DNA of 63,521 bases, counting the filler, from Octopus bimaculoides (Eukaryota), in assembly GCF_001194135.2 (NCBI RefSeq). It is 4 parts of 3 records of this genome, joined end to end, with 100 filler letters (N's around TTAATTAATTAA, not from the genome) between each part and the next. Parts side by side here need not be neighbours in the genome. Positions count along the whole stretch, not along the records: positions 1 to 29,222 come from NC_068995.1; 3 more parts are not named here. One strand, written 5' to 3'. The stretch's first letter is position 1. Each line of letters begins with the position of its first letter. Under the pieces are notes generated by a model. The model was not told where the DNA came from, ran no database searches, and saw only the letters and a program-made list of their open reading frames with translations. This document shows positions 12,227 through 28,049 of the stretch, piece after piece. The translations under genes and the position numbers were made by a program.

Positions 12227-13496
12227 TATGTATGTATGTATGTATGTATGTATGTATGTATGTATGTATGTATGTGTGTGTGTGTATGTGTGTGTGTGTG
12301 TGTGTGTGAGTGTGTGTGTGTGTATGTGTGTGTGTGTGTGTGTGTGTGATATAGATATAGAAAAAGAGGGAGGGAAAGGAATAGACAGATAGAGATAGAA
12401 ACAGACAGAGAAAAAGACCGACCGACTGGCAGAGAGAAAAAGAGAAATGTATGTGTGTGTTTGTAACTTTTTAACATCTTTTCTTCGATTCTTGCATTTT
12501 TTCGCATTTTTTTCTCTAGCTAATGCTAATGTTGATGACATACACATGGGCGGTTGAAATGTTCAAAATTAAGTACATATATGATGTCTTCACTTCTCCC
12601 CAGGCGGGTTTTTGCCTTGGGAGTCTTTATTGGATATTTCCGTCCTTAACGTTTATTTGGTGTAATGATTATTTGAGCAACTATACAGCTGGAAAAGACC
12701 GTCGTAGCTTAATGCTTCGAGTAGTAGCAATAACTGCTTAAATAACTCGTTGTATAAACAAATAAAATTGGATCAATTCCTATAAACTGTAACTGTTTCT
12801 TTTGTATGAATGCAATCTTAACTCATGCAGGAGGTCGTACAGAAACAACATGTGGAACTCTTTTGTAAATCAAAACATATAACGTAAGCATCTTGCAGTG
12901 TTTTTCTTTGTGTGCTTACGTACCAAAAGTGTATTGTCACTGTTTGTGATGGGTATATATTAAATGTTGTTATGGCTTTCTGAAGAGACATGAAACGGAC
13001 ACAATTTTTAAATACTGAGTTTGATTTTCGAATTATTCTTCCAGGTCAACCATATTAGTAGTTGAGATGAATTTATATGGTCCTTGGCATGTTTAAAAGT
13101 GTTTGTTCAGATCTCATCTAACTTAATGTTAAATGTAAATTTCATCTTAGTTTTCTACTCAACTAAGCAATTATTACTTTATGATAATACATTGGTGATT
13201 TGTTTGGTATTGTTCCAAGGAAGTTGACCAGATAATGCTTGAATATGCTGTATGTTTTTTTTTTATCTGGTCAAGGTAGAAAAAGTAATGGTCTAAAGCG
13301 TGCTTAGCCATTTGTAGATTCTTGAATTACATATTAGCTGCATACTAGCAAGCTAGAAATACATGCTATCATAACTAACGTAATATGATCAGATTTCTAA
13401 AAGTTATTTAGAATCAAGGCTCTTTCAGCATAGGTTATTGTCAACAATGAATCTGAATTCTTCATGCTATTCGGTAAAAGAAAATCTAGGAATATA

Positions 13497-14478: not shown

Positions 14479-14479
14479 T

Positions 14480-14718
<239 letters not shown>

Positions 14719-16619
14719 TATGTTTGATTTTTGCTTTGCATTTGTACAACTTGTACAGAGACATCAAGAGACTACAAATTAGAAGTTCATGTTGGTATTA
14801 TGCCTAGGATATCATATATTTACTTTTGCGCATAGTATTGTTCTAGAGAATGTTTAAGAAAACATAAGAAAATTATAAGTTTGTTTTAAAATTTGAGATT
14901 ATATAGACAGTATTTGACGTAGGATATGGGCAGTTCCCATGAGTACTATCTTTTGAATTTCTGCCATTTTGGGGTTTCCTGGTATCTGAGCTAGGTAGGA
15001 ATCCCCTTTTGCTATCGTTCTTAGGACACCTATGACAACAAGTATTGTTTTAATCGTGAGGTTCCACATTTGGCAATTTCTATTTCAAGATCTTTATACT
15101 TGCTCAGTTTTTGCTAGGTCTTGACAGATACATTTATGCCGATTGGGACAATCATATCAATGAGAAGGCATGATTTTCGCCTAAAGTCTTTCAATATAAT
15201 GTCTGGCCTATTTGCATCTATCTTTCTGTCAGTTTGAACGGTGAAGTTCCAGAGAAGTGAGATGTGATCATTTTCAAGCAGGTGGTTTGTATTCCCATCA
15301 GTTTTTATCATGGAGCAGGTCCAGGTTTTTGCAAATTACCTAGTGAATATATTGTGCTACTCTATCATGCCTGCTGAGATACTCCGTATGCTCAGGGAGA
15401 CAACATGATCAATGGTTTCATTTTGTTGTTTACATACACGACATGTTGGGCTACTGCCGTTCTTTAATATGTTAGCCTGGTAGTTCCTTTTAGGTAGGCA
15501 TTGATCTTGGGCTGTTATAATAAATCCTTCTGTTTCTGATTTTAAGCCAGAAGACACTAGCCATTGATTGGTAAAGATTTGTCAACAACGGCTCTATTAG
15601 CTCTCATTGAGAGGTTTTTCTTGCCATTTATCAGTAAGAATATCTAAGGCAGGCAGTAGTTTTAGCATGGGTTTTCATACGCTTAGCTTTTTCTGTGCTT
15701 GTTTCCAGTACGTCTAATTCTGGGATATGTTGTATTTGGAATTCACTTAGATATTCCTTTGCCTGTTTTGCTACCGAGTGTGACACTTTCTTGTTTAAGA
15801 CAAGTTTTGACATCCAGTCAACAGAGTTTTTCAAGCAATCTTCATTGTTAATTCCAGATGTAAAAGTCTACGGCCACCCTATTTTCTTGTCAGGTAAAAT
15901 CGTTCTATATCTGCCTTGGAGTGATGCATTCTCTGCATTCTCAACAATTTTCGTATGTTTCTGTCAATATTACATATTTCAGTAATTGACAAGTTAATGA
16001 TATTGAAACTGTAAGTTACGACAGATATGGATAAAGCATTGATTGCTTCGATTCTGTTTCTTGCATTTAGGTCTGTCTTGAGTATTGCCCTTACCCTGTG
16101 ATAACATTCTCTTCTGATTCATTCTCTCATCATTGAATGTTTGATTCCATCACCTTCAGATACTCCTAGGTATTTATAGCGCTCCGCTGGTTCTAACTCC
16201 TTTATGACATTCTGTTGGTCAAGATTAACGTTGGATGTTTCTGTCATTTTCCTTTTGATAAAGGTAACTTTTTCACATTTATCAAGGCCAAATTGCATTC
16301 TAATGTCATCACTGAATTGTTTAACAATCGCTAGTAAGCCCTGTAGCTGTTGGTCATTTTTTGCAAAAAGCTTTAAATCATCCATGTAAATGAGGTGATT
16401 TATATTTTTATCAAATATTTTATAGCCGTATTGTACATCATCAAGCAATTTCGAGAGAGTTATTAAGGCTAGACAAAAGAGGAATGGTGATAGAGAGTCA
16501 CCCTGGAAAATTCCACATGAAATACATCTCCAGCATTGAGAGATTCATTGTCACTGTTCAAAGTCAGTGTGGTTCTCCATGATCTCATATTACATACAAG
16601 AAGTTTCGCAGGGTAGGTT

Positions 16620-17506
16620 CTAGGTACATGGGTACATGTTTGGGTACATGGGGGTTAACACATACTTTTAAAACAAAACAATTTTATTTAATTATAATGT
16701 TAATAAATTATATTTTCAAAATGATTGCCATCATTTTCAATGCATAACTTGATGCGCCTTGCAAAATTCAGGTGAACTCGATTAAATAAGTCTACATTGC
16801 CGTCAATTTCAGCACACTGACTGGTAATGCGTTCTCTCATGTGGTTTCTCTTTCAACATACCCCAGAAAAAGAAGTCAAGGGGAGAAAGGTCTGGTGAAC
16901 GAGGGGACCATTCCACATGACCCCTTCTTCCAATCCAGTGAGGAAAAGTGTCATTAAGCCAATCTCTAACAGTTATGGCAAAATGGGCAGGGGCCCCATC
17001 CTGCTGAAACCAATTCGGAAATCCCTCGCTTAGGCACTCAATTTGAGGTATTAATTTGTTAAAAAGGAAAATTATTATAGCGTGGAAGGTGTTTATAAGC
17101 CATTTAAGAAACACACAAAAACCGTTAGATTCACTTCAACATTTAAATTTAATTTGTCAAAATATTTTCGTCGCTTTGAGACCGCGACCTGTTCACTGAC
17201 AAAATTCTGTGCAGCACAGAATTTTATCTGAACAGGTCGCGGTCTCAAAGCGACGAAAATATTTTGGCAAATTAAATTTAAACGTTGAAGTGAATCTAAT
17301 GGTTTTTGTGTGTTTCTTAAATGGCTTATAAACACCTTCCACGCTGCAATTGTTTTCGTTCCAGCACAGGATCCCAGATCAGGTCACTTGCTATGCAAGT
17401 ACATCTCCGAAAATTATTATTTCTTATATTTAATTGTTTATGTTATGATTGGTGGGTGTCCACAAAGTCTGGGTACTCCATGTACCTAGACTTTCTGGAC
17501 ACCCAG
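16620..17506 (-). mobile_element. IS630-Tc1-mariner (Tc3-like) transposon remnant inserted in the LINE
   Basis: WFQQDGAPAHF...WSPRSPDLSPLDFFFWG. Right TIR ends ...ctggacacccag|TA at 17506; partial left TIR tctaggtacatgg at about 16620. The LINE resumes at 17507, as shown by comparison with the 1-345 paralogue. Confidence 0.82.
17078..17346. mobile_element. Foldback/MITE: near-perfect 267-bp palindrome
   Basis: Arms 17079-17212 and 17214-17345 differ by 3 substitutions plus one small asymmetric loop. Ends ta|tagcgtgg...ccacgctg|ca resemble a decayed TA-flanked CAGCGTGG TIR. Confidence 0.8.
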
Positions 17507-19125: not shown

Positions 19126-19269
<144 letters not shown>

Positions 19270-19319: not shown

Positions 19320-20960
19320 TTATAGCCCTTCTCTTCTATTTACTTCATAACCTCCCCCAACAGTATCGCTTGCCCGTCCATACTTAATTTTGCCTTTCTT
19401 CAAGACTAACACACCACACTTTTTCAGTCCGAACTCCATTCTGATATCAGCAGTGAAAGTGTACACCGTGTCAACAATGGAACTGAATTGGAATTCATCC
19501 TTGCCATAAAGTTTGAGGTCATCCATGAATAGCAAGTGGTAGACTTTTTGTTGGCGGCTCTTGAATACATACCCAACCTTTGCTTTCCACAGTATCAGTG
19601 TTAGTTGTATCATGCACAGTACAAAGATCAGTGAGGGCAGCAGTCCCCGTGGAAGATGCCTCTCATGATTTCTATTGTCTCTAAACTTATTCCATATGCT
19701 GTCATGTTCGTCCTCCACTTTGCCATACTTTTCCAAGCAATCGTTCAACATTCGTTACAATACCAAATACATTCCATAATCCAAGAATATGGGATCATAT
19801 CGTATGCTTTACGATAATTGGTCCATGACATGGCTAAGTTAGTTTCCTCCTCTTGCAGTCTTTATGTACAATTTTGTCTACCAGGACTTGATCCTTGGTA
19901 CCTCTGTACTTACGTTTGCACCCTTTCTGCTCATTGGCAAGACTCCATGTTTTTCCATATATCCGTACTCTGCGACTATTCCAGTCAATAATTTCCACAT
20001 AAGTAACAAGCAGGCCTACCCATTGTTAACCACTCTGGTATTAATTACTTGGTCGGCATTTAACAAGGTGTTGAGTTGTGCAGCTATTCGTGCATGGCAT
20101 TTACCAAAGTTTTTGATCCAGTAGCCTTGAACTCCATCTGGTCCCGGGCCCTTTCAGTTGCCCACTTTTTTGCTGATTTTCTTCACTTTCCTAATTGAAA
20201 TGACTAGTTCTGTCTGTTTTGGATAGCCTACTGCTTATTTCAGTTCTTGCAACCATTCAGCATCCTTTTTGTGTTCCTTGTTTTTGCTCCAGATGTCACT
20301 CCAAGACCTTGGACTTTCAATGTTATCTGGTATCAACTTTTCTTCTGTACAGTCTAAATTTATTTCTTTATAGAGTCTCTTCTGATCTACTCTGAATAAC
20401 CTATTCTGCTGGTATTCATTCTTCGGTCGTATCTTACCATCTTTGCTTTCTTTGCAACGAGGCGCTGTTTCCGTTCCTCCACTAATACTTTCAGGCCTAT
20501 TTTTTTTTCATTATCATACTTCCTGTTCAGTGCCCTGTATTTTTGTTGGCTTTTAAGCTCCCCCTTTTCTTTTCGGTTTAACACAGAAATGTCCTTCGAG
20601 AGCATATCTTACCCCGCCTGTATTCTTCTTTTCCACCATAGATCTTTTCTTTTGTCACTCCCATTATACTTATTCTTCGTGACATCAACACTCATATTTT
20701 CTGATACAACAATACTTGCTGCCTTAATCAAATTGTTTGTTTCTGTGATGTTTTTTGTTCTGATGTATTTCAGAATTCACATTTTTCGTTACTTGATTCA
20801 ATTTCCACCAATCAGGTTTTTTAAGGTTGCAAATAATGTTGCTCTCGTTCTCTTGTAGCCTTGTCTTTATTCTGTCGTAGATTGTCTTTTGCCCATCTGT
20901 CATGTCACCATTAGTTTTATTGCCTTCTTCCAGACCAACTAAATGTCTCTCATAGAGCAA
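19320..20960 (-). mobile_element. Second R4/Dong-like LINE fragment (different subfamily)
   Basis: HLLFMDDLKLYGK...DIRMEFGLKKCGVL and GPGPDGVQGYWIK motifs; N-terminal QRLVAKKAKMVRY region. Confidence 0.82.
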
Positions 20961-22538: not shown

Positions 22539-23727
22539 ACACGCACACATATTCCAGCTATACTATTCCTACAATTTCCGAAAGACCTGCCGTTGAGTGA
22601 ATGTCTTTTGGTTGTGCTGTGTCCAGGACTAAAATCATACTACTCTTCGGCAGGCTTGGGCTCAACAATCTCCCTACATTTCTTTTCCAGACACTTTGTG
22701 TAGACTTTACCAGGGAAGCTCAACAAAGATTAGAGTACTCTTTCTTATTTCCTTTTTTAACAATTAGAGTTATCACTCCGGATTGCCATTGGTTTGGTGT
22801 CTATCTTATGGCAAAAAGAGAAAAACAAATGAAAGTCAGTCTGGTAACATTTCTTTCAATGACAGTATCCGACAGAAAATGCTGCAGACATCTAGGGAAG
22901 GATAAAAGATATATACCATTTTGGGATATGTAACAATGAACACGTAACTAGGGAATTTTACACCGATGAAAAAATTATCCTGAATACTGTCTATATACAA
23001 TAAACCAGTGGAATATAACGTGTTCGCCGCACCGGTATTCATACAAATATTTAGGCTACTCGATTGAATGCCAGATGAGATCTATGACATAAGAAAATTA
23101 TCAGCCGCCATCAAAAATTTCCCTTCATATTACCACACAAGTGTACGTTTTTGAAATCCAAGAACAAAAATTGATAACCTGATGCTTAAGGTGGTTATAG
23201 GTATAATACCAAGATGAGACAACTGATGCAGACTTGTAAAGGGTCAAGACTAAAATACGGCAAGCTTTCTTTTTATAATTCTGAAATTACTGGATAATAT
23301 TGATTTTTGTTTGACAAGGTACAAAGAAAAAAAAAAAGGAAAGAAAGAAAGGAAGAAAACAGCCGTTTCGAGAGTTTCTCTGATGGTGACTACCGCAGTA
23401 TAGTTTGTCTTATAGAACACCCACGTTTAAGTGGAGATAAATACTACCTCTCAGTTTTAATACTGCCTCTGTCACTAATATGCTCTATATTTTAAAATCT
23501 TCGTGTGTATAATTTTAATATGCATAAATGATTTCAAATGTAACCAGCGTGATTATTTGTTAACCGTTACCTAAATACATAGCAAATACATAGACTACTA
23601 TCCTCGGATCTACCATTACTCTTATCATCACCAATGTCATGGTCATTCGTATTGCTATCATCATCGTTATTGTATATGGATCACCAGTAATTGCTCTATT
23701 ATTTTCTTGTATTATTTCTATTTGTAG

Positions 23728-23957
23728 GTTTCTTGGAGTATCATCACTGAGTACCCTGCATGGAGACACTTGCAATGAAGTACCTGGATTAGTGTGGAGG
23801 CAAATAGAAGTATGTCGTAACAATCCTCAGACACTCTATTGCATCAGTGAAGGTGCTAGGAAAGGAATTATGGAGTGCAAAGCACAGTTTCGTTATGAAC
23901 GTTGGAACTGTACAACCCAACGGAATCTTTCGGTGTTTGGACAAACTTTAACTAAAG
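23728..23957 (+). CDS. Wnt: Internal coding exon (typical exon-2 position) of a Wnt-family ligand; subfamily unresolved (WntA-like is a guess)
   Basis: Translates (W)FLGVSSLSTLHGDTCNEVPGLVWRQIEVCRNNPQTLYCISEGARKGIMECKAQFRYERWNCTTQRNLSVFGQTLTK(G), with the Wnt N-terminal C..PGL..Q..C / EC..QF...RWNC / VFG motifs. Acceptor tttgtag|G at 23727/23728 after a pyrimidine tract; donor AAAG|gtaaca at 23957/23958. The 230-nt exon is phase 2 to phase 1, as in Wnt genes. Confidence 0.93.
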
Positions 23958-24261
23958 GTAACATTACTTTCATTATCGTTAAATCATCAGACAAAATGCC
24001 ATGAGGTAATTACGGCTTTTTTGTATCCTGAGATCAAACCGCACTGGAGTCAACACTGATTTCAATCTTTCTGAGTCGATGAACTAAATGCTACTCAAAT
24101 ACTGTTGTCAGTACTATCGACTAATCCCTCACACCCAAATTTCTAGGCTTGTACCCCTGTACGGAACCATTATTACATATAACTTCTCCGCAATCCTTCT
24201 GAACTTCTCTCCCTTACTTAACATCTTTTTAAAAACGTTGTTTATTATTATTTTTCTGTTT

Positions 24262-24325
<64 letters not shown>

Positions 24326-25112
24326 TCATGTCTATTATATTAATTGAGTGAACGAATAAATAATACCGGAATTTATCAATCATGTCACTCTCTAATGTAG
24401 TAAACTTTAAAACAATATAACATTTTAAATGGTTTCTTTTGAACAGCGTCGGCAGCTTTCTTTGAACATGATTTGATAGGGTCAAAATATTCTGCTTGGG
24501 TCCTGCTATCCGCGTATAGAAGCACGTTCTGCCTTTATGGACGAAGTTGCGAAGTTTAATGACATATTCAAAATAGGAATACCTTTAACGGTTCTTTAGC
24601 TTACCACCGCATTCGGTTATCTACCTCTTCTTTTTTGTTTTCGATTGAAAGATTGTAGTCCCACCCATTTAGCATTTCTTAAGTGTTAGTAATCCTGATT
24701 AGAAATTTTACTTGATGATTTGTTGATTAATCAACATGTTGCCGCTTGCTTGTTTATTTGGTTGGCCTGATGAGTTGAGAGTATGCAGCATATTACGTAA
24801 TCTTATGAATGTTGTTTATATTGCATACCTAACTGTATTATGCTTACGTCACAATAAAACCTCTCAACGAAACAAATGTAGCAACTACCAGATAACCCAG
24901 TTGTCCGTTTTTGTGTGTTTTTTCTTACAACACGTTTAATGTTCCATTCATCGTTTGATACTTTTGAATAATATTGCAGTTGTGGATTACATAACAACGG
25001 TGAACTTCCCTACATCGAAACATTCCGTGCTATGATAATGGATATCATAACTTTCTGCTTTGCGTTATTCTGGGTGGGACCCTTGTAAATCAAAATTATA
25101 TATATGTATGTA

Positions 25113-25168
<56 letters not shown>

Positions 25169-25172
<4 letters not shown>

Positions 25173-25590
25173 TGGGGTTAAACTAGTAGTAACATTCATC
25201 AGCCAATTTGATGTGACGACTGACTTTACTGTTCAGTATAGTTTCTACTCCGGTCTCTTCGTGAGGTTTCACAACTAGCTATATTGTTTGTTGCAAATCA
25301 GTGACCGATGGTCACTTTGTTTACAATATATCGTTAGCGTTAGCGGACTCTGGCTATCGCTTTGGCGGAGGTACTCCCGACTGAGGAGTGGCCAAATAGC
25401 TCGAAACTGAGTCAGTCTCGCGACCCTGATACCCGCTAGAGAGTGATAGAGGTTCGCTCCCCCTGCTAACAATATATTGATTGTATATAAGAGGTGCAGA
25501 GTTGCGCCGATAACCAGCAGGCGGAGAATCTGCTTGGGGTTAAATTGGTAGTAACCTTCAACAGCCACTTTGATGTGGCAACTGGCTTTA

Positions 25591-25594
<4 letters not shown>
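25169..25594 (+). mobile_element. Hammerhead-containing retrozyme-like or Penelope-pLTR-like element (362-nt unit plus about 60-nt terminal redundancy)
   Basis: Direct repeats 25173-25232 and 25535-25594 (52/60 identical by hand, period 362) enclose the hammerhead. Flanked on both sides by (TA)n. No recognisable coding capacity. Confidence 0.7.
25371..25427 (+). ncRNA. Extended type I hammerhead ribozyme
   Basis: CTGAGGA (25381-87), stem II G88-C02 with loop CAAATA, GAAA (25403-06), 4-bp stem III (ACTG/CAGT, loop AGT), GTC cleavage triplet (25415-17), stem I TCCCGA/TCGCGA (5 of 6 paired) preceded by GTAC. Confidence 0.88.
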
Positions 25595-25631
<37 letters not shown>

Positions 25632-25634
<3 letters not shown>

Positions 25635-25870
25635 CTTTATTGCCCACAGGAGGCTAAATACAGAGGGGACAAACAAGGACTGACAAAGGGATTAAGTCGA
25701 TTACATCGACCCCAGTGCGTAACAGGTACTCATTTAATCGACCCTGAAAGGATGAAAGGCAAAGTCGACCTCGGTGGTATTTGAACTCAGAACGTAACGG
25801 CAGACGAAATACCGCTAAGCATTTCGCCCGGCGTGCTAACGATTCTGCCAGCCCTATGCCAGCTCGCCGC
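25632..25870 (-). mobile_element. SINE family A with a third 3' tail type
   Basis: Standard head and body; 3' end ...gtcccctctgtatttagcctcctgtgggcaataaagaaa followed by (TA)n. Confidence 0.88.
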
Positions 25871-25887
25871 CCTATGCCAGCTCGCCG

Positions 25888-26900
25888 GTTGAGTAAAAGT
25901 AAGTAACGCTTTGAAACATGAAGAATTTATATCGGATTTTTGCAGAGTTTCGAAATGATTTTAAACATTTTTTTGCAATTGTCTTATAATACAGACATAC
26001 ACTTACCCAAATGCATCAACAAATGAGCATTGATCTTTTATTCACCGCTGTTACAATCATCTGAAATGGAACTCTCAAAGCGCGATATTCGAGCAATTTT
26101 GCTATTCAACTTTTAAAAAGGTTGTGAAGCCGCTGAAACTGCTCGCGATATCAACGAAACGTTTGGTGAGGAAATGGCTAGTGAGTGGTCAGCTCGAAAA
26201 TGGTTTAAACGATTTCGCAGTAGAGACCTGAGCCTTGAAGATTGTGAGCATAGTGGACCTCCATCTGTCATCGGTGACGGTCAATTAAAGGCCGTCACTG
26301 AGAAAAGATCCACGTAAAACCACTCGAGAACTAACAAAAGAACTTCAAGTTAGCCCAGAAAACTGCTTGCAACCATTCGCATGTGATCGGAAAATTTAAA
26401 ATCCCGACAAATGGGTACCACTCTATTTGAATGAAAATCAGAAAATGCGCAGATATGAAATTTTCTCGTCGCTTTTCCGTAACCAGACTGATCCATTTCT
26501 CGACCGTAATGTAAGTTGTGATGAAAAATGGATTCTGTACAATAATAAAAAGGTTCTTCGCAGTGGTTGGACCTAAATGAAGCACCGAAAACCTTCCCTA
26601 AACCTGAGATTTACAAAAAGAAACCTAAATGAAGCACCGAAAACCTTCCCTAAACCCGAGATTTACAAAAAGAAAGTTATGGTGCCTGTTTGGTGGTGCA
26701 CTGCTGGACTCATCCACTATAACTTCTTAAAACCCGGAAAAACCATTACTGCAGAAACATATTGCCATGAAATTGGCAAAATGAACGAAAAACTGCTACT
26801 TCTCCGTCCCAGACAAGTCAATACAAGAAAGCCAATCATTTTTCATGACAATGCTCGACCACACGCTTCACTAATAATGCTGAAGAAGTTGAGGGGACAT
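25888..26900 (+). mobile_element. mariner (Mos1/Hsmar-like) transposon, 3'-truncated pseudogene
   Basis: ATG at 26066: MELSKRDIRAIL...AAETARDINETFG...WFKRFRS, DEKWILYNN, KKVMVPVWW and FHDNARPH, with frameshifts. Confidence 0.9.
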
Positions 26901-27327
26901 AAGTATCGTATGATAATATTCATGACCATATCTAGCCATGATCTGTCAACTCACTCTTGTTCTTTATTCAAAATAGACATAGTCTTCTAGTCTCAGATTT
27001 AATAGATGACACGGAGAGAAATAAATTAGAAATGAATTACAACACATACAACCCTATGACCCCCACTATGCTCCATGCGATTCTAAGAAATTGCAGTCTA
27101 TTCTAAGCCTAGTGGATTAGCTACAATAGCGATAACATGAATTTCTTCCATCTTCTTAGTCTGTTAAAATATTTCAGAAAAATTATTTTAATGTGTCCTA
27201 CTTGTTAAAAAATTCTATATTTTGCGCTGCATTTAAATTGATGTAATGATTGCATTGTTCAATTAAATGGAGCCGCTTGAAACGGTCGTACTCATTACTA
27301 CTTGCTATTCTTTTGCTTATTTTGACA

Positions 27328-27490: not shown

Positions 27491-28049
27491 CAGGGTGTTT
27501 CGGCTAGATTTGATGGGCATAAAAGGAAAAGAAAACGCAATATTCCATCCAACTTAAAAGTATTTTAAAAGCTCAAAACGTATGGCTGTGAGATAACAGC
27601 TTACTCAAAGCAGCCAGCCTCAGCTTCCACCATAGTTTTAAGACGGCTCCGAAACCTGGTGCGTGCGTTCCCTACTGTGTCCCTGGAAAGATCATTGAAT
27701 ATCTCCGTGATTTTGGCCACTAGCTTGGCCTTGGTGTTGTGGGCAGAGTGGTTGATGTCTTTCTCAACCGCACCCCACACATAGTAATCTAAGGGATTGC
27801 AATCGGGGGAATTTGGGAGGCCAAAAATTGGGACAACTACTTCTGACTCTTTCCGGAGGTGTGATAAGGAGCCAAATTCTGCAGCCACATATACAGCCTT
27901 CCTGCAGCAACCCTCTCAAGACAGGGATTGAACACAGTCTCCAGTATGGCTGTTGAAATTGAGCCTAAGGCCTTGTTCAAAGGTGTGGGGTGGCAGGACC
28001 TCACTCTCACTGCACACACGAACGCGCACGCGCATACACTCACTCTCTA

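What the first reader, a model, noticed from the sequence alone, without database searches (positions are those of the whole stretch)
25371..25427. Complete extended type I hammerhead ribozyme with both tertiary-contact motifs
Seen in sequence: GTAC-TCCCGA-CTGAGGA-GTGGC-CAAATA-GCTC-GAAA-CTG-AGT-CAG-TC|TCGCGA. All conserved core positions match (C3-A9 at 25381-87, G10.1-C11.1, G12-A15.1 at 25403-06, U16.1 at 25416, C17 at 25417). Stem I has 5 of 6 pairs, stem II has 4 pairs with one bulged U, and stem III has 4 pairs. Established: the Schistosoma full-length hammerhead uses loop II CAAAUA docking on a GUAC bulge 6 bp from the core, and both motifs are here at the same spacing. Inference: a possibly still active ribozyme cleaving after 25417. 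The stem III palindrome ACTGAGTCAGT could also allow dimeric folding.
Basis: partly seen in the sequence, partly recalled or inferred. Interest (0 to 1): 0.92.

Follow-up and report, generated by a model that had tools for sequence, protein, structure and literature searches.

The report
Hammerhead ribozyme in a retroelement copy
The sequence really does carry a complete hammerhead self-cleaving RNA motif, but it sits inside a single old copy of a small mobile repeat of a kind already known to be common in animal genomes, so it is a sound but ordinary find.

Summary
There is a full type I hammerhead core, three helices, a CAAAUA loop II and a GUAC bulge 6 nt before the core. My own descriptor hit once in the window and never in 1500 shuffles. 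Rfam gives no gathering-level hit: the best is Hammerhead_HH9 at 18.7 bits against a cut-off of 52.

The motif is not free-standing. It caps a 39-bp imperfect hairpin inside a 362-bp non-coding unit. That unit is present as 1.17 head-to-tail copies (25170-25594) and is flanked on both sides by (TA)n. It lies in sense orientation about 1.2 kb into the intron after a Wnt16-like exon, in what is most likely octopod cephalopod DNA.

This matches the known metazoan hammerhead retroelements, namely non-LTR retrozymes and non-autonomous derivatives of Penelope-like elements. Those elements form partial tandems and prefer (TA)n targets.

The locus holds one ribozyme only, so it cannot release a unit-length RNA. 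The copy is old (repeat arms 14% diverged). It has a C·C mismatch in stem I and a bulged U in stem II, and both pair in a competing hairpin. Activity is therefore possible but unproven.

Verdict: a new member of a known kind, of modest interest.

The parts
25097..25169 (.). (TA)n microsatellite, left flank of the insertion (inferred target)
   Evidence: TRF, period 2, 36.5 copies. The junction ...ATATATATG|CCTGGGG is visible.
25170..25232 (+). 5'-truncated partial unit: the last 63 nt of the repeat unit, which acts like a pseudo-LTR
   Evidence: Direct repeat of 25532-25594, spacing 362. It is 85% identical over 67 nt, with 9 differences in 63 nt and K2P 0.16.
25233..25594 (+). One full 362-nt non-coding repeat unit carrying the hammerhead
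   Evidence: Repeat spacing is 362. The 425-bp insertion is 46% GC; the 362-nt monomer is 46-47% GC. No other copy exists in the window and there is no tRNA. The only other weak Rfam matches are low-complexity matches on the flanking (TA)n tracts. As a circular monomer its MFE is -116 kcal/mol against -99 +/- 5.6 for shuffles, z = -3.0.
25324..25368 (+). 5' arm of the long imperfect hairpin that extends stem I
   Evidence: 39 pairs with 25433-25479 in the MFE of 25318-25484; z = -3.7 on the + strand and -4.6 on the - strand.
25369..25374 (+). Stem I internal loop, 5' side (AGGUAC), containing the GUAC/UAC tertiary-contact motif
   Evidence: UAC aligns with the UAC of the HH9 consensus and of L001, in each case 6 nt before CUGA.
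25375..25380 (+). Proximal stem I, 5' strand (UCCCGA)
   Evidence: 5 of 6 pairs with 25418-25423; C25377·C25421 is mismatched.
25381..25387 (+). Core C3-A9 (CUGAGGA)
25388..25402 (+). Stem II (G10.1-C11.1, bulged U25389, three further pairs) with loop II CAAAUA at 25393-98
   Evidence: The Rfam alignment treats U25389 as an insertion.
25403..25406 (+). Core G12 A13 A14 A15.1
25406..25416 (+). Stem III (4 pairs, loop AGU); a near-palindrome that can form an intermolecular duplex
25417..25418 (+). Predicted cleavage site: after C17 (25417), before U1.1 (25418)
   Evidence: Position in the motif (GUC|U). No cleavage was tested.
25418..25423 (+). Proximal stem I, 3' strand (UCGCGA)
25424..25432 (+). 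Stem I internal loop, 3' side (CCCUGAUAC)
25433..25479 (+). 3' arm of the long hairpin that extends stem I
25594..25632 (.). (TA)n microsatellite, right flank of the insertion
   Evidence: TRF, period 2, 19.5 copies. The junction is ...TTTACTGT|ATATAT.
25633..25885 (-). SINE-like repeat copy whose end abuts the (TA)n tract. Context only: it is the probable source of the (TA)n target.
   Evidence: 77-91% identical to six other copies in the window.
23728..23957 (+). Wnt16-like exon with AG/GT splice sites. Context only: it places the element in the following intron, in sense orientation.
   Evidence: Pfam wnt, E 5e-14. Splice sites are. tblastn with Pomacea Wnt-16-like finds only this exon in the window.

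Best explanation
The hammerhead belongs to a single, old insertion of a small non-coding retroelement. The element is of the type described as metazoan non-LTR retrozymes, or non-autonomous derivatives of Penelope-like elements (PLEs).

In the active form of such elements, tandem units are transcribed and each unit's type I hammerhead cuts after C17. [quoted passage not shown] A retroelement reverse transcriptase then copies the RNA back into DNA.

Here, target-primed reverse transcription began in a (TA)n tract. It ran through one 362-nt unit and 63 nt into the next round, then stopped. That left a 5'-truncated partial tandem, 25170-25594.

Shown by the data: the motif, the repeat architecture, the (TA)n flanks, the lack of coding capacity and the strong self-pairing.

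Inferred: the mode of mobilisation, the existence of other copies in the genome, and any activity. With only one ribozyme, this locus can at most cut a host or read-through transcript once. It cannot produce a circular monomer.

The ribozyme is probably weakened by a C·C mismatch in stem I and a bulged U in stem II.
For: - The motif is complete and is not a chance match.
- The best Rfam family is a hammerhead, with loops aligned to the family consensus.
- The 362-bp unit is present as 1.17 copies, with (TA)n on both sides.
- There is no protein family, no tRNA and no other credible RNA family in the element.
- The insertion is 46% GC.
- The circular monomer folds with z = -3.0, and the ribozyme caps a 39-bp hairpin with z = -3.7.
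- Literature on metazoan type I hammerheads: they lie in 150-450 bp repeats of under 50% GC, lack LTR, PBS and PPT, and are expressed as highly self-paired circRNAs of about 170-400 nt (PMC7229834).
- Literature on PLEs: they insert as partial tandems with a truncated upstream copy, carry hammerheads in the pseudo-LTR and prefer (TA)n (PMC8557442).
- Monomeric retrozyme derivatives are common and retrozymes are related to PLE pseudo-LTRs (bioRxiv 10.64898/2026.07.22.740005).
- An unrelated metagenomic contig, L001, carries the same hammerhead subtype in a 511-515-bp partial tandem.
- The host is a coleoid cephalopod, probably an octopod. Octopus genomes hold recently active Penelope families (PMC13282606).
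Against: - Only one copy is available. There is no second copy in the window, and no relatives were retrievable through spurious-ORF protein searches or look-ups. So multi-copy status, a family consensus and covariation are all untested.
- No PLE reverse transcriptase or GIY-YIG gene was identified in the window. The two RT fragments match only the general RVT_1 model.
- The locus fails the 'tandem with at least two ribozymes' feature of retrozymes.
- The Rfam score is far below gathering.
- The 14% divergence of the repeat arms could mean a heterogeneous template rather than age.
Confidence: 0.75

Rival explanations
1. A Sm-alpha-like SINE. The unit would be a polymerase III-transcribed short interspersed element carrying a hammerhead, as in Schistosoma. 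It would be mobilised by a LINE rather than by a Penelope-like element or through a circular RNA.
For: - The size (362 bp) and the Schistosoma-type loops fit.
- GGTTCGCTCCC at 25451-61 resembles a B box by eye. This comparison was made from memory and not tested.
- LINE-type RT fragments and many SINEs are present in the window.
Against: - There is no tRNA-like gene or tRNA Rfam match in the element.
- There is no poly(A) or LINE-like 3' tail.
- The head-to-tail partial duplication and the (TA)n target are hallmarks of PLE-type insertion.
Confidence: 0.12
2. An exapted intronic ribozyme. The hammerhead would have been retained by selection in the Wnt16-like intron, in sense orientation, to influence pre-mRNA processing, as proposed for the amniote HH9 and HH10 ribozymes.
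For: - It lies on the same strand as the Wnt exon, about 1.4 kb from the exon end to the ribozyme.
- Every core position is intact although the repeat arms are 14% diverged.
- The best Rfam match is HH9.
Against: - An intact core is expected by chance about 35% of the time at this divergence.
- Helices I and II carry defects.
- The motif is still embedded in a recognisable insertion.
- The cuttlefish orthologous contigs reach about 1.28 kb past the Wnt exon and match the window only in the exon, apart from a 30-nt low-complexity match. Conservation therefore cannot be shown.
- The HH9 gathering score is not met.
Confidence: 0.05
3. A chance resemblance with no ribozyme ancestry.
For: Rfam gives no hit at gathering score. 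18.7 bits corresponds to about E 3 for the whole window.
Against: - There were 0 descriptor hits in 1500 shuffled windows, even without requiring the two loop motifs.
- The loop motifs sit at the same spacing as in HH9 and L001.
- The motif lies at the tip of a significant long hairpin inside a repeat unit.
Confidence: 0.02

Closest known systems
Metazoan non-LTR retrozymes (Cervera & de la Pena 2020, PMC7229834), e.g. the Mytilus 350-390 bp, Acropora 220-245 bp and axolotl 330/350 bp repeats
   Same: Type I hammerhead; non-coding unit within the 170-400 nt range; GC below 50%; no LTR, PBS or PPT; strongly self-paired predicted circular RNA; head-to-tail arrangement.
   Different: Only 1.17 units and one ribozyme are present here, so no monomer can be excised from this locus. 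Copy number and expression are unknown. Unlike the mussel ribozymes, this one keeps the canonical loop 1 and loop 2 nucleotides.
Penelope-like elements and their pseudo-LTR hammerheads (Cervera & de la Pena 2014; Craig et al. 2021, PMC8557442; Li et al. 2026 preprint)
   Same: Insertion as a partial tandem with a 5'-truncated upstream copy; (TA)n target, so no discernible target-site duplication; a hammerhead in the repeated part.
   Different: There is no RT or GIY-YIG ORF. PLE hammerheads are usually minimal variants with a very short helix III, whereas this one is a canonical extended motif.
Schistosoma mansoni Sm-alpha hammerhead (the type I ribozyme of the full-length crystal structure)
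   Same: Loop II CAAAUA on a 4-bp stem II (S. mansoni sequence in PMC5666329); GUAC 6 nt before CUGA (from memory of the crystallised construct); a non-autonomous repeat of about 330-360 bp.
   Different: N7 is G rather than U. There is a bulged U at 10.2, a C·C mismatch at 1.4/2.4 and a larger 3' side of the stem I internal loop. No polymerase III promoter was demonstrated.
Rfam Hammerhead_HH9 (RF02275), the conserved intronic hammerhead of amniotes
   Same: Best-scoring Rfam family, with a full-length alignment (model positions 1-77). Intronic and in sense orientation.
   Different: 18.7 bits against a gathering score of 52. Different phylum. No evidence of orthologous conservation.
Newt/salamander satellite 2 and ASBVd hammerheads, which act as dimers
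   Same: Near-palindromic helix III that can pair between two copies.
   Different: Helix III here has 4 pairs and a triloop, which is more stable than the 1-2 bp helices that make dimerisation obligatory.

Membership tests
Hammerhead ribozyme, type I | Invariant core: C3 U4 G5 A6 N7 G8 A9, G12 A13 A14, the A15.1-U16.1 pair, H17 and G10.1-C11.1 | tested here: met
   All are present at 25381-87, 25388/25402, 25403-06, 25416 and 25417.
Hammerhead ribozyme, type I | Three helices around the core, with helices II and III closed by loops and helix I open | tested here: met
   Stem I has 5/6 pairs plus a distal 8 bp. Stem II has 4 bp plus a bulged U. Stem III has 4 bp. The imperfections are C25377·C25421 and U25389.
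Hammerhead ribozyme, type I | Loop 1 / loop 2 tertiary-contact nucleotides (UAC in the stem I internal loop, CAAAUA-type loop II) at canonical spacing | tested here: met
   Met at sequence level only. UAC is 6 nt before CUGA and loop II is CCAAAUAG, aligned with the HH9 consensus and with L001 and with the S. mansoni loop II.
Hammerhead ribozyme, type I | Score at or above the Rfam gathering threshold for a hammerhead model | tested here: not met
   No gathering-level hit. HH9 scores 18.7 bits against 52, and the other clan model scored lower.
Hammerhead ribozyme, type I | Site-specific self-cleavage after position 17 | not testable with these tools
   Needs in vitro transcription. The nearest-neighbour model puts the hammerhead-compatible fold at -19.4 kcal/mol against an MFE of -31.4. 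The model also misses the hammerhead fold for the HH9 consensus and L001.
Metazoan non-LTR retrozyme | Non-coding unit of about 150-450 bp with a type I hammerhead, GC below 50%, and no LTR, PBS or PPT | tested here: met
   362-bp unit; insertion 46% GC; only spurious ORFs.
Metazoan non-LTR retrozyme | Tandem array with at least two ribozymes, so that a monomer can be released | tested here: not met
   1.17 units and a single hammerhead at this locus. It fits the 'monomer derivative' class described in the 2026 preprint.
Metazoan non-LTR retrozyme | Predicted highly self-paired circular RNA | tested here: met
   Circular MFE -116 kcal/mol, z = -3.0, 64% of bases paired.
Metazoan non-LTR retrozyme | Many copies in the genome and expression as linear and circular RNA | not testable with these tools
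There is no second copy in the window and no relatives were found.
Penelope-like-element-type insertion | Partial tandem (truncated copy upstream of a full copy) and a microsatellite (TA)n target | tested here: met
   63-nt truncated copy plus a full unit, flanked by (TA)n on both sides. Criteria are taken from PMC8557442.
Penelope-like-element-type insertion | Sequence relationship to the pseudo-LTR of an autonomous PLE in the same genome | not testable with these tools
   No PLE was identified in the window and the genome is not available.
Hammerhead_HH9-type exapted intronic ribozyme | Conservation at the orthologous intronic position across species | tested here: inconclusive
   The cuttlefish contigs carrying the orthologous exon do not align in the intron. 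No closer relative is available.
Sm-alpha-like SINE | tRNA-derived polymerase III promoter (A and B boxes) | tested here: inconclusive
   ARAGORN finds no tRNA and there is no tRNA match at E <= 10. A B-box-like string at 25451-61 was seen by eye only.

The most novel reading that the evidence does not exclude
The hammerhead is not just debris. It would be kept, or tolerated because it is useful, in sense orientation in the intron of a cephalopod Wnt16-like gene. The competing hairpin built from the two 'defects' (C25377, U25389) would act as a switch that limits co-transcriptional cleavage. That would make it an invertebrate counterpart of the amniote intronic hammerheads.
Probability: 0.04. 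Interest if true: 0.65.

Novelty: new member of a known kind. Interest (0 to 1): 0.3.

Why it matters
It shows that canonical, Schistosoma-type extended hammerheads occur in what appears to be an octopod genome. It also gives a clean single-insertion example linking such a ribozyme-bearing unit to the insertion signature of Penelope-like elements: a partial tandem in (TA)n. That supports the recent proposal that animal retrozymes are non-autonomous PLE derivatives.

For the host gene, it is a candidate for a self-cleaving site inside a Wnt pre-mRNA intron. It does not open a new class of element or mechanism.

Tried and rejected
- **Rfam.** The gathering scan of the whole window found nothing.
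- **Second core string.** The site at 12168-12209(-) was inspected and is not a hammerhead.
- **Other RNAs in the element.** There is no tRNA. The E-value Rfam scan of 25050-25700 gave only low-complexity matches on the (TA)n tracts and no tRNA or other ribozyme.
- **Retrieving other copies of the unit.**
  - blastn of the unit against the window found none.
  - The protein search with the spurious minus-strand ORF across the element found none.
  - The exact look-up of that ORF found nothing on record.
  - The hammerhead pattern gave 0 hits in viral contigs.
  - In metagenomes it gave one unrelated element, L001.
- **Identifying the organism.**
  - The word-index protein search with the Wnt exon found nothing.
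  - Exact look-ups of three window ORFs, including the one across the element, found nothing.
  - The full HMMER search succeeded. Through a run accession, it led to a cuttlefish relative.
- **Orthologous intron comparison.** Only the exon aligns.
- **MFE folding as a test of the hammerhead fold.** I rejected it as decisive because it also fails on the HH9 consensus and on L001.
- **Further Wnt exons in the window.** None were found by motif regex or by tblastn.

Full report
**1. The observation**

I checked each proposed pair:
- Proximal stem I (25375-80 with 25418-23) has five standard pairs and one C·C mismatch (25377/25421).
- Stem II is G25388-C25402, a bulged U25389, then G-U, G-C and C-G, closing the loop CAAAUA.
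- Stem III is A25406-U25416 plus three pairs, with the loop AGU.
- C25417 is the predicted cleavage nucleotide.

Beyond an internal loop (AGGUAC on the 5' side, CCCUGAUAC on the 3' side), stem I continues as an 8-bp helix, 25361-68 / 25433-40.

**2. Is it more than chance?**

The bare string CTGANGA...CGAAAC occurs twice in the window, against 0.08 expected. The second site, 12168-12209 on the minus strand, has A at 10.1 and no stem III or U16.1-H17, so it is not a hammerhead.

I wrote a structural descriptor requiring the core, G10.1-C11.1, three more stem II pairs with at most one bulge, a stem III, U-H, and at least 5 of 6 stem I pairs. It found this site only, and found nothing in 1500 dinucleotide-preserving shuffles of the window on both strands. 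The descriptor did not require the loop motifs. It was written after seeing the sequence, so it is lenient towards it.

Rfam is less generous. No family reaches its gathering score anywhere in the window. In E-value mode the best family is Hammerhead_HH9, at 18.7 bits against a cut-off of 52, with E 0.024 for a 201-nt search and 0.079 for 651 nt. Scaled to the whole window this would not be significant on its own. HH9 is a narrow amniote family, so I read this as 'hammerhead-like, not an HH9 member'.

The loop features are shared with independent hammerheads. In the HH9 consensus and in a metagenomic hammerhead (L001), UAC also lies exactly 6 nt before CUGA and loop II reads CCAAAnAG. A published S. 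mansoni ribozyme sequence has GAGUCCCAAAUAGGACGAAAC (PMC5666329).

**3. What surrounds it**

The motif is not isolated.
- A 67-nt segment at 25166-25232 recurs at 25528-25594, with 85% identity and a spacing of 362.
- The insertion therefore spans 25170-25594. It consists of a 63-nt 5'-truncated copy followed by one full 362-nt unit.
- It is bracketed by (TA)n on both sides, at 25097-25169 and 25594-25632.
- The right-hand tract abuts a minus-strand copy of a SINE-like repeat (25633-25885). That repeat has at least six other copies in the window, so the target was probably that repeat's microsatellite end.
- The unit has only spurious ORFs, no tRNA and no other credible Rfam match. The insertion is 46% GC.

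The unit is strongly structured.
- The hammerhead caps a 39-bp imperfect hairpin, 25324-68 / 25433-79. The 167-nt region folds at -59.2 kcal/mol, with z = -3.7 on the + strand and -4.6 on the - strand.
- The 362-nt unit folded as a circle gives -116 kcal/mol, against -99 +/- 5.6 for shuffles (z = -3.0).

No other copy of the unit is in the window.

**4. Genomic setting**
- An ORF at 23639-24004 contains a Wnt-domain exon (Pfam wnt, E 5e-14). It has a polypyrimidine tract and AG at 23726-27, and GT at 23958.
- tblastn with a full-length gastropod Wnt-16-like protein finds only this exon, aligning residues 18-112. A motif search also finds no later Wnt exon in the 5.2 kb downstream.
- The element therefore lies about 1.2 kb into the following intron, on the sense strand. 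This assumes the gene continues beyond the window.
- The full HMMER search gave a best relative with 85% identity (P0001/P0151). Named matches are gastropod Wnt/Wnt-16-like proteins at 63-65%.
- P0151 is encoded on Logan contigs from runs that include ERR12945500. A cuttlefish genome paper identifies that run as Acanthosepion esculentum short reads.
- Only the exon aligns between those contigs and the window, at 75% nucleotide identity. The window therefore comes from a different, fairly distant coleoid cephalopod.
- The same paper notes that SINE expansion is specific to octopuses. At least seven SINE-like copies in 29 kb points to an octopod. My recollection that this SINE looks like the common octopus SINE is memory only.

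**5. What it most likely is**

The architecture matches known hammerhead-bearing retroelements of animals.
- Cervera and de la Pena (PMC7229834) showed that most type I hammerheads in animal genomes lie in non-coding 150-450 bp head-to-tail repeats. These repeats have under 50% GC and lack LTR, PBS and PPT. They are transcribed, self-cleaved, circularised by a tRNA ligase and presumed to be reverse-transcribed by PLEs or LINEs.
- Craig et al. (PMC8557442) describe the PLE insertion signature: 5' truncation, a partial tandem in which a truncated copy precedes a full one (a pseudo-LTR), hammerheads in that repeat, and a strong bias for (TA)n that hides target-site duplications.
- A 2026 preprint reports that retrozymes are related to PLE pseudo-LTRs and that monomeric derivatives are common.
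- Octopus vulgaris carries recently active Penelope families (PMC13282606).
- The metagenomic contig L001 shows the same ribozyme subtype in a 511-515 bp partial tandem. Its upstream copy has lost A6.

I therefore read 25170-25594 as one old insertion of such an element. Reverse transcription would have been primed in (TA)n, run once around or along the template and 63 nt further, and then stopped.

**6. Is the ribozyme active?**

This cannot be decided here.

In favour of activity:
- All invariant positions are present, and so are both tertiary-contact motifs.
- Helix III has 4 bp, which is longer than in the salamander ribozymes that need dimers.
- The helix III string can also pair between two molecules (10 of 11 pairs, -13.2 kcal/mol).

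Against activity:
- There is a C·C mismatch in the middle of stem I and a bulged U next to G10.1.
- A competing hairpin, ACUCC (25373-77) with GGAGU (25385-89), uses exactly those two odd nucleotides.
- The nearest-neighbour model puts the hammerhead-compatible fold at -19.4 kcal/mol, against an MFE of -31.4.
- In silico, C25377G alone removes the competitor and brings back stem I.

The same model fails to recover the hammerhead fold for the HH9 consensus and for L001, so this is weak evidence against activity.

The repeat arms differ at 9 of 63 positions (K2P 0.16). At that divergence an untouched 14-nt core is expected about 35% of the time, so its integrity does not indicate selection. Whatever its rate, a single ribozyme cannot release a unit-length RNA from this locus.

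**7. Rivals**
- A Sm-alpha-like, polymerase III-driven SINE is possible. It has no tRNA-like support, and the element lacks a LINE-type tail.
- An exapted intronic ribozyme, like HH9, is suggested only by the sense orientation and lacks any conservation evidence.
- Chance is effectively excluded.

**8. Verdict**

This is a new member of a known kind. It has some value as a clean example of a PLE-type insertion signature around a canonical hammerhead in a cephalopod, and as a sense-strand intronic copy in a developmental gene.

Noticed in passing
window 452-544, 6848-7004, 7526-7673, 7733-7884, 7936-8102, 8179-8326, 25633-25885: At least seven copies of one SINE-like repeat (77-91% identical), three of them in a 223-bp-period array at 7735-8276. 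From memory it resembles the abundant octopus SINE. This density fits the octopus-specific SINE expansion.
   Followed up: partly
window 23728-23957 (+): A Wnt16-like exon with canonical AG/GT splice sites. It is 85% identical in protein to an ORF on cuttlefish (Acanthosepion esculentum) contigs and 63-65% identical to gastropod Wnt/Wnt-16-like proteins. It is the only Wnt exon in the window.
   Followed up: yes
window 25373-25377 with 25385-25389: A competing hairpin, ACUCC/GGAGU, pairs exactly the two nucleotides that are 'defects' in the hammerhead fold (C25377, U25389). It sequesters part of the core. It could be an accident of decay or a conformational brake, and this cannot be tested with one sequence.
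   Followed up: partly
window 26577-26990 (+), 27601-27888 (-), 16809-17114 (-): Mariner/Tc1-like transposase remnants. The first matches Pfam Transposase_1 (E 8e-21). The other two are recognised by motif only. A 52-bp segment is duplicated at 98% identity at 26571-26675, at the start of the first remnant.
   Followed up: partly
window 16119-16448 (-), 19320-19751 (-): Two reverse-transcriptase fragments (Pfam RVT_1; motifs YMDDLKLF and FMDDLKLY), probably from LINE remnants. They were not classified further.
   Followed up: no
window 2340-2672 and 5886-5957: Runs of N (assembly gaps) inside the piece.
   Followed up: no
window 14479-14716, 19126-19268, 12229-12348, 24260-24327: Very high microsatellite density, including the compound arrays (TTC)27-(TTA)53 and (TGT)24-(TTA)24.
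   Followed up: no
window 12168-12209 (-): A second CTGAGGA...CGAAAC string. It lacks G10.1, stem III and U16.1-H17 and is a chance match.
   Followed up: yes
L001 (metagenome contig Ga0126343_10297528) 1-760: An unrelated 511-515-bp partial tandem carrying the same hammerhead subtype (GUAC, then 6 nt, then CUGACGAG, loop CAAAUA). The downstream copy is intact. The upstream copy has CUGUCGAG (A6 to U) and a deletion next to UAC. Helix III is a 2-bp stem with a palindromic AGCU loop.
   Followed up: partly
window 25451-25461: GGTTCGCTCCC resembles a polymerase III B box (GGTTCGANNCC) by eye. No A box or tRNA-like fold was detected.
   Followed up: no
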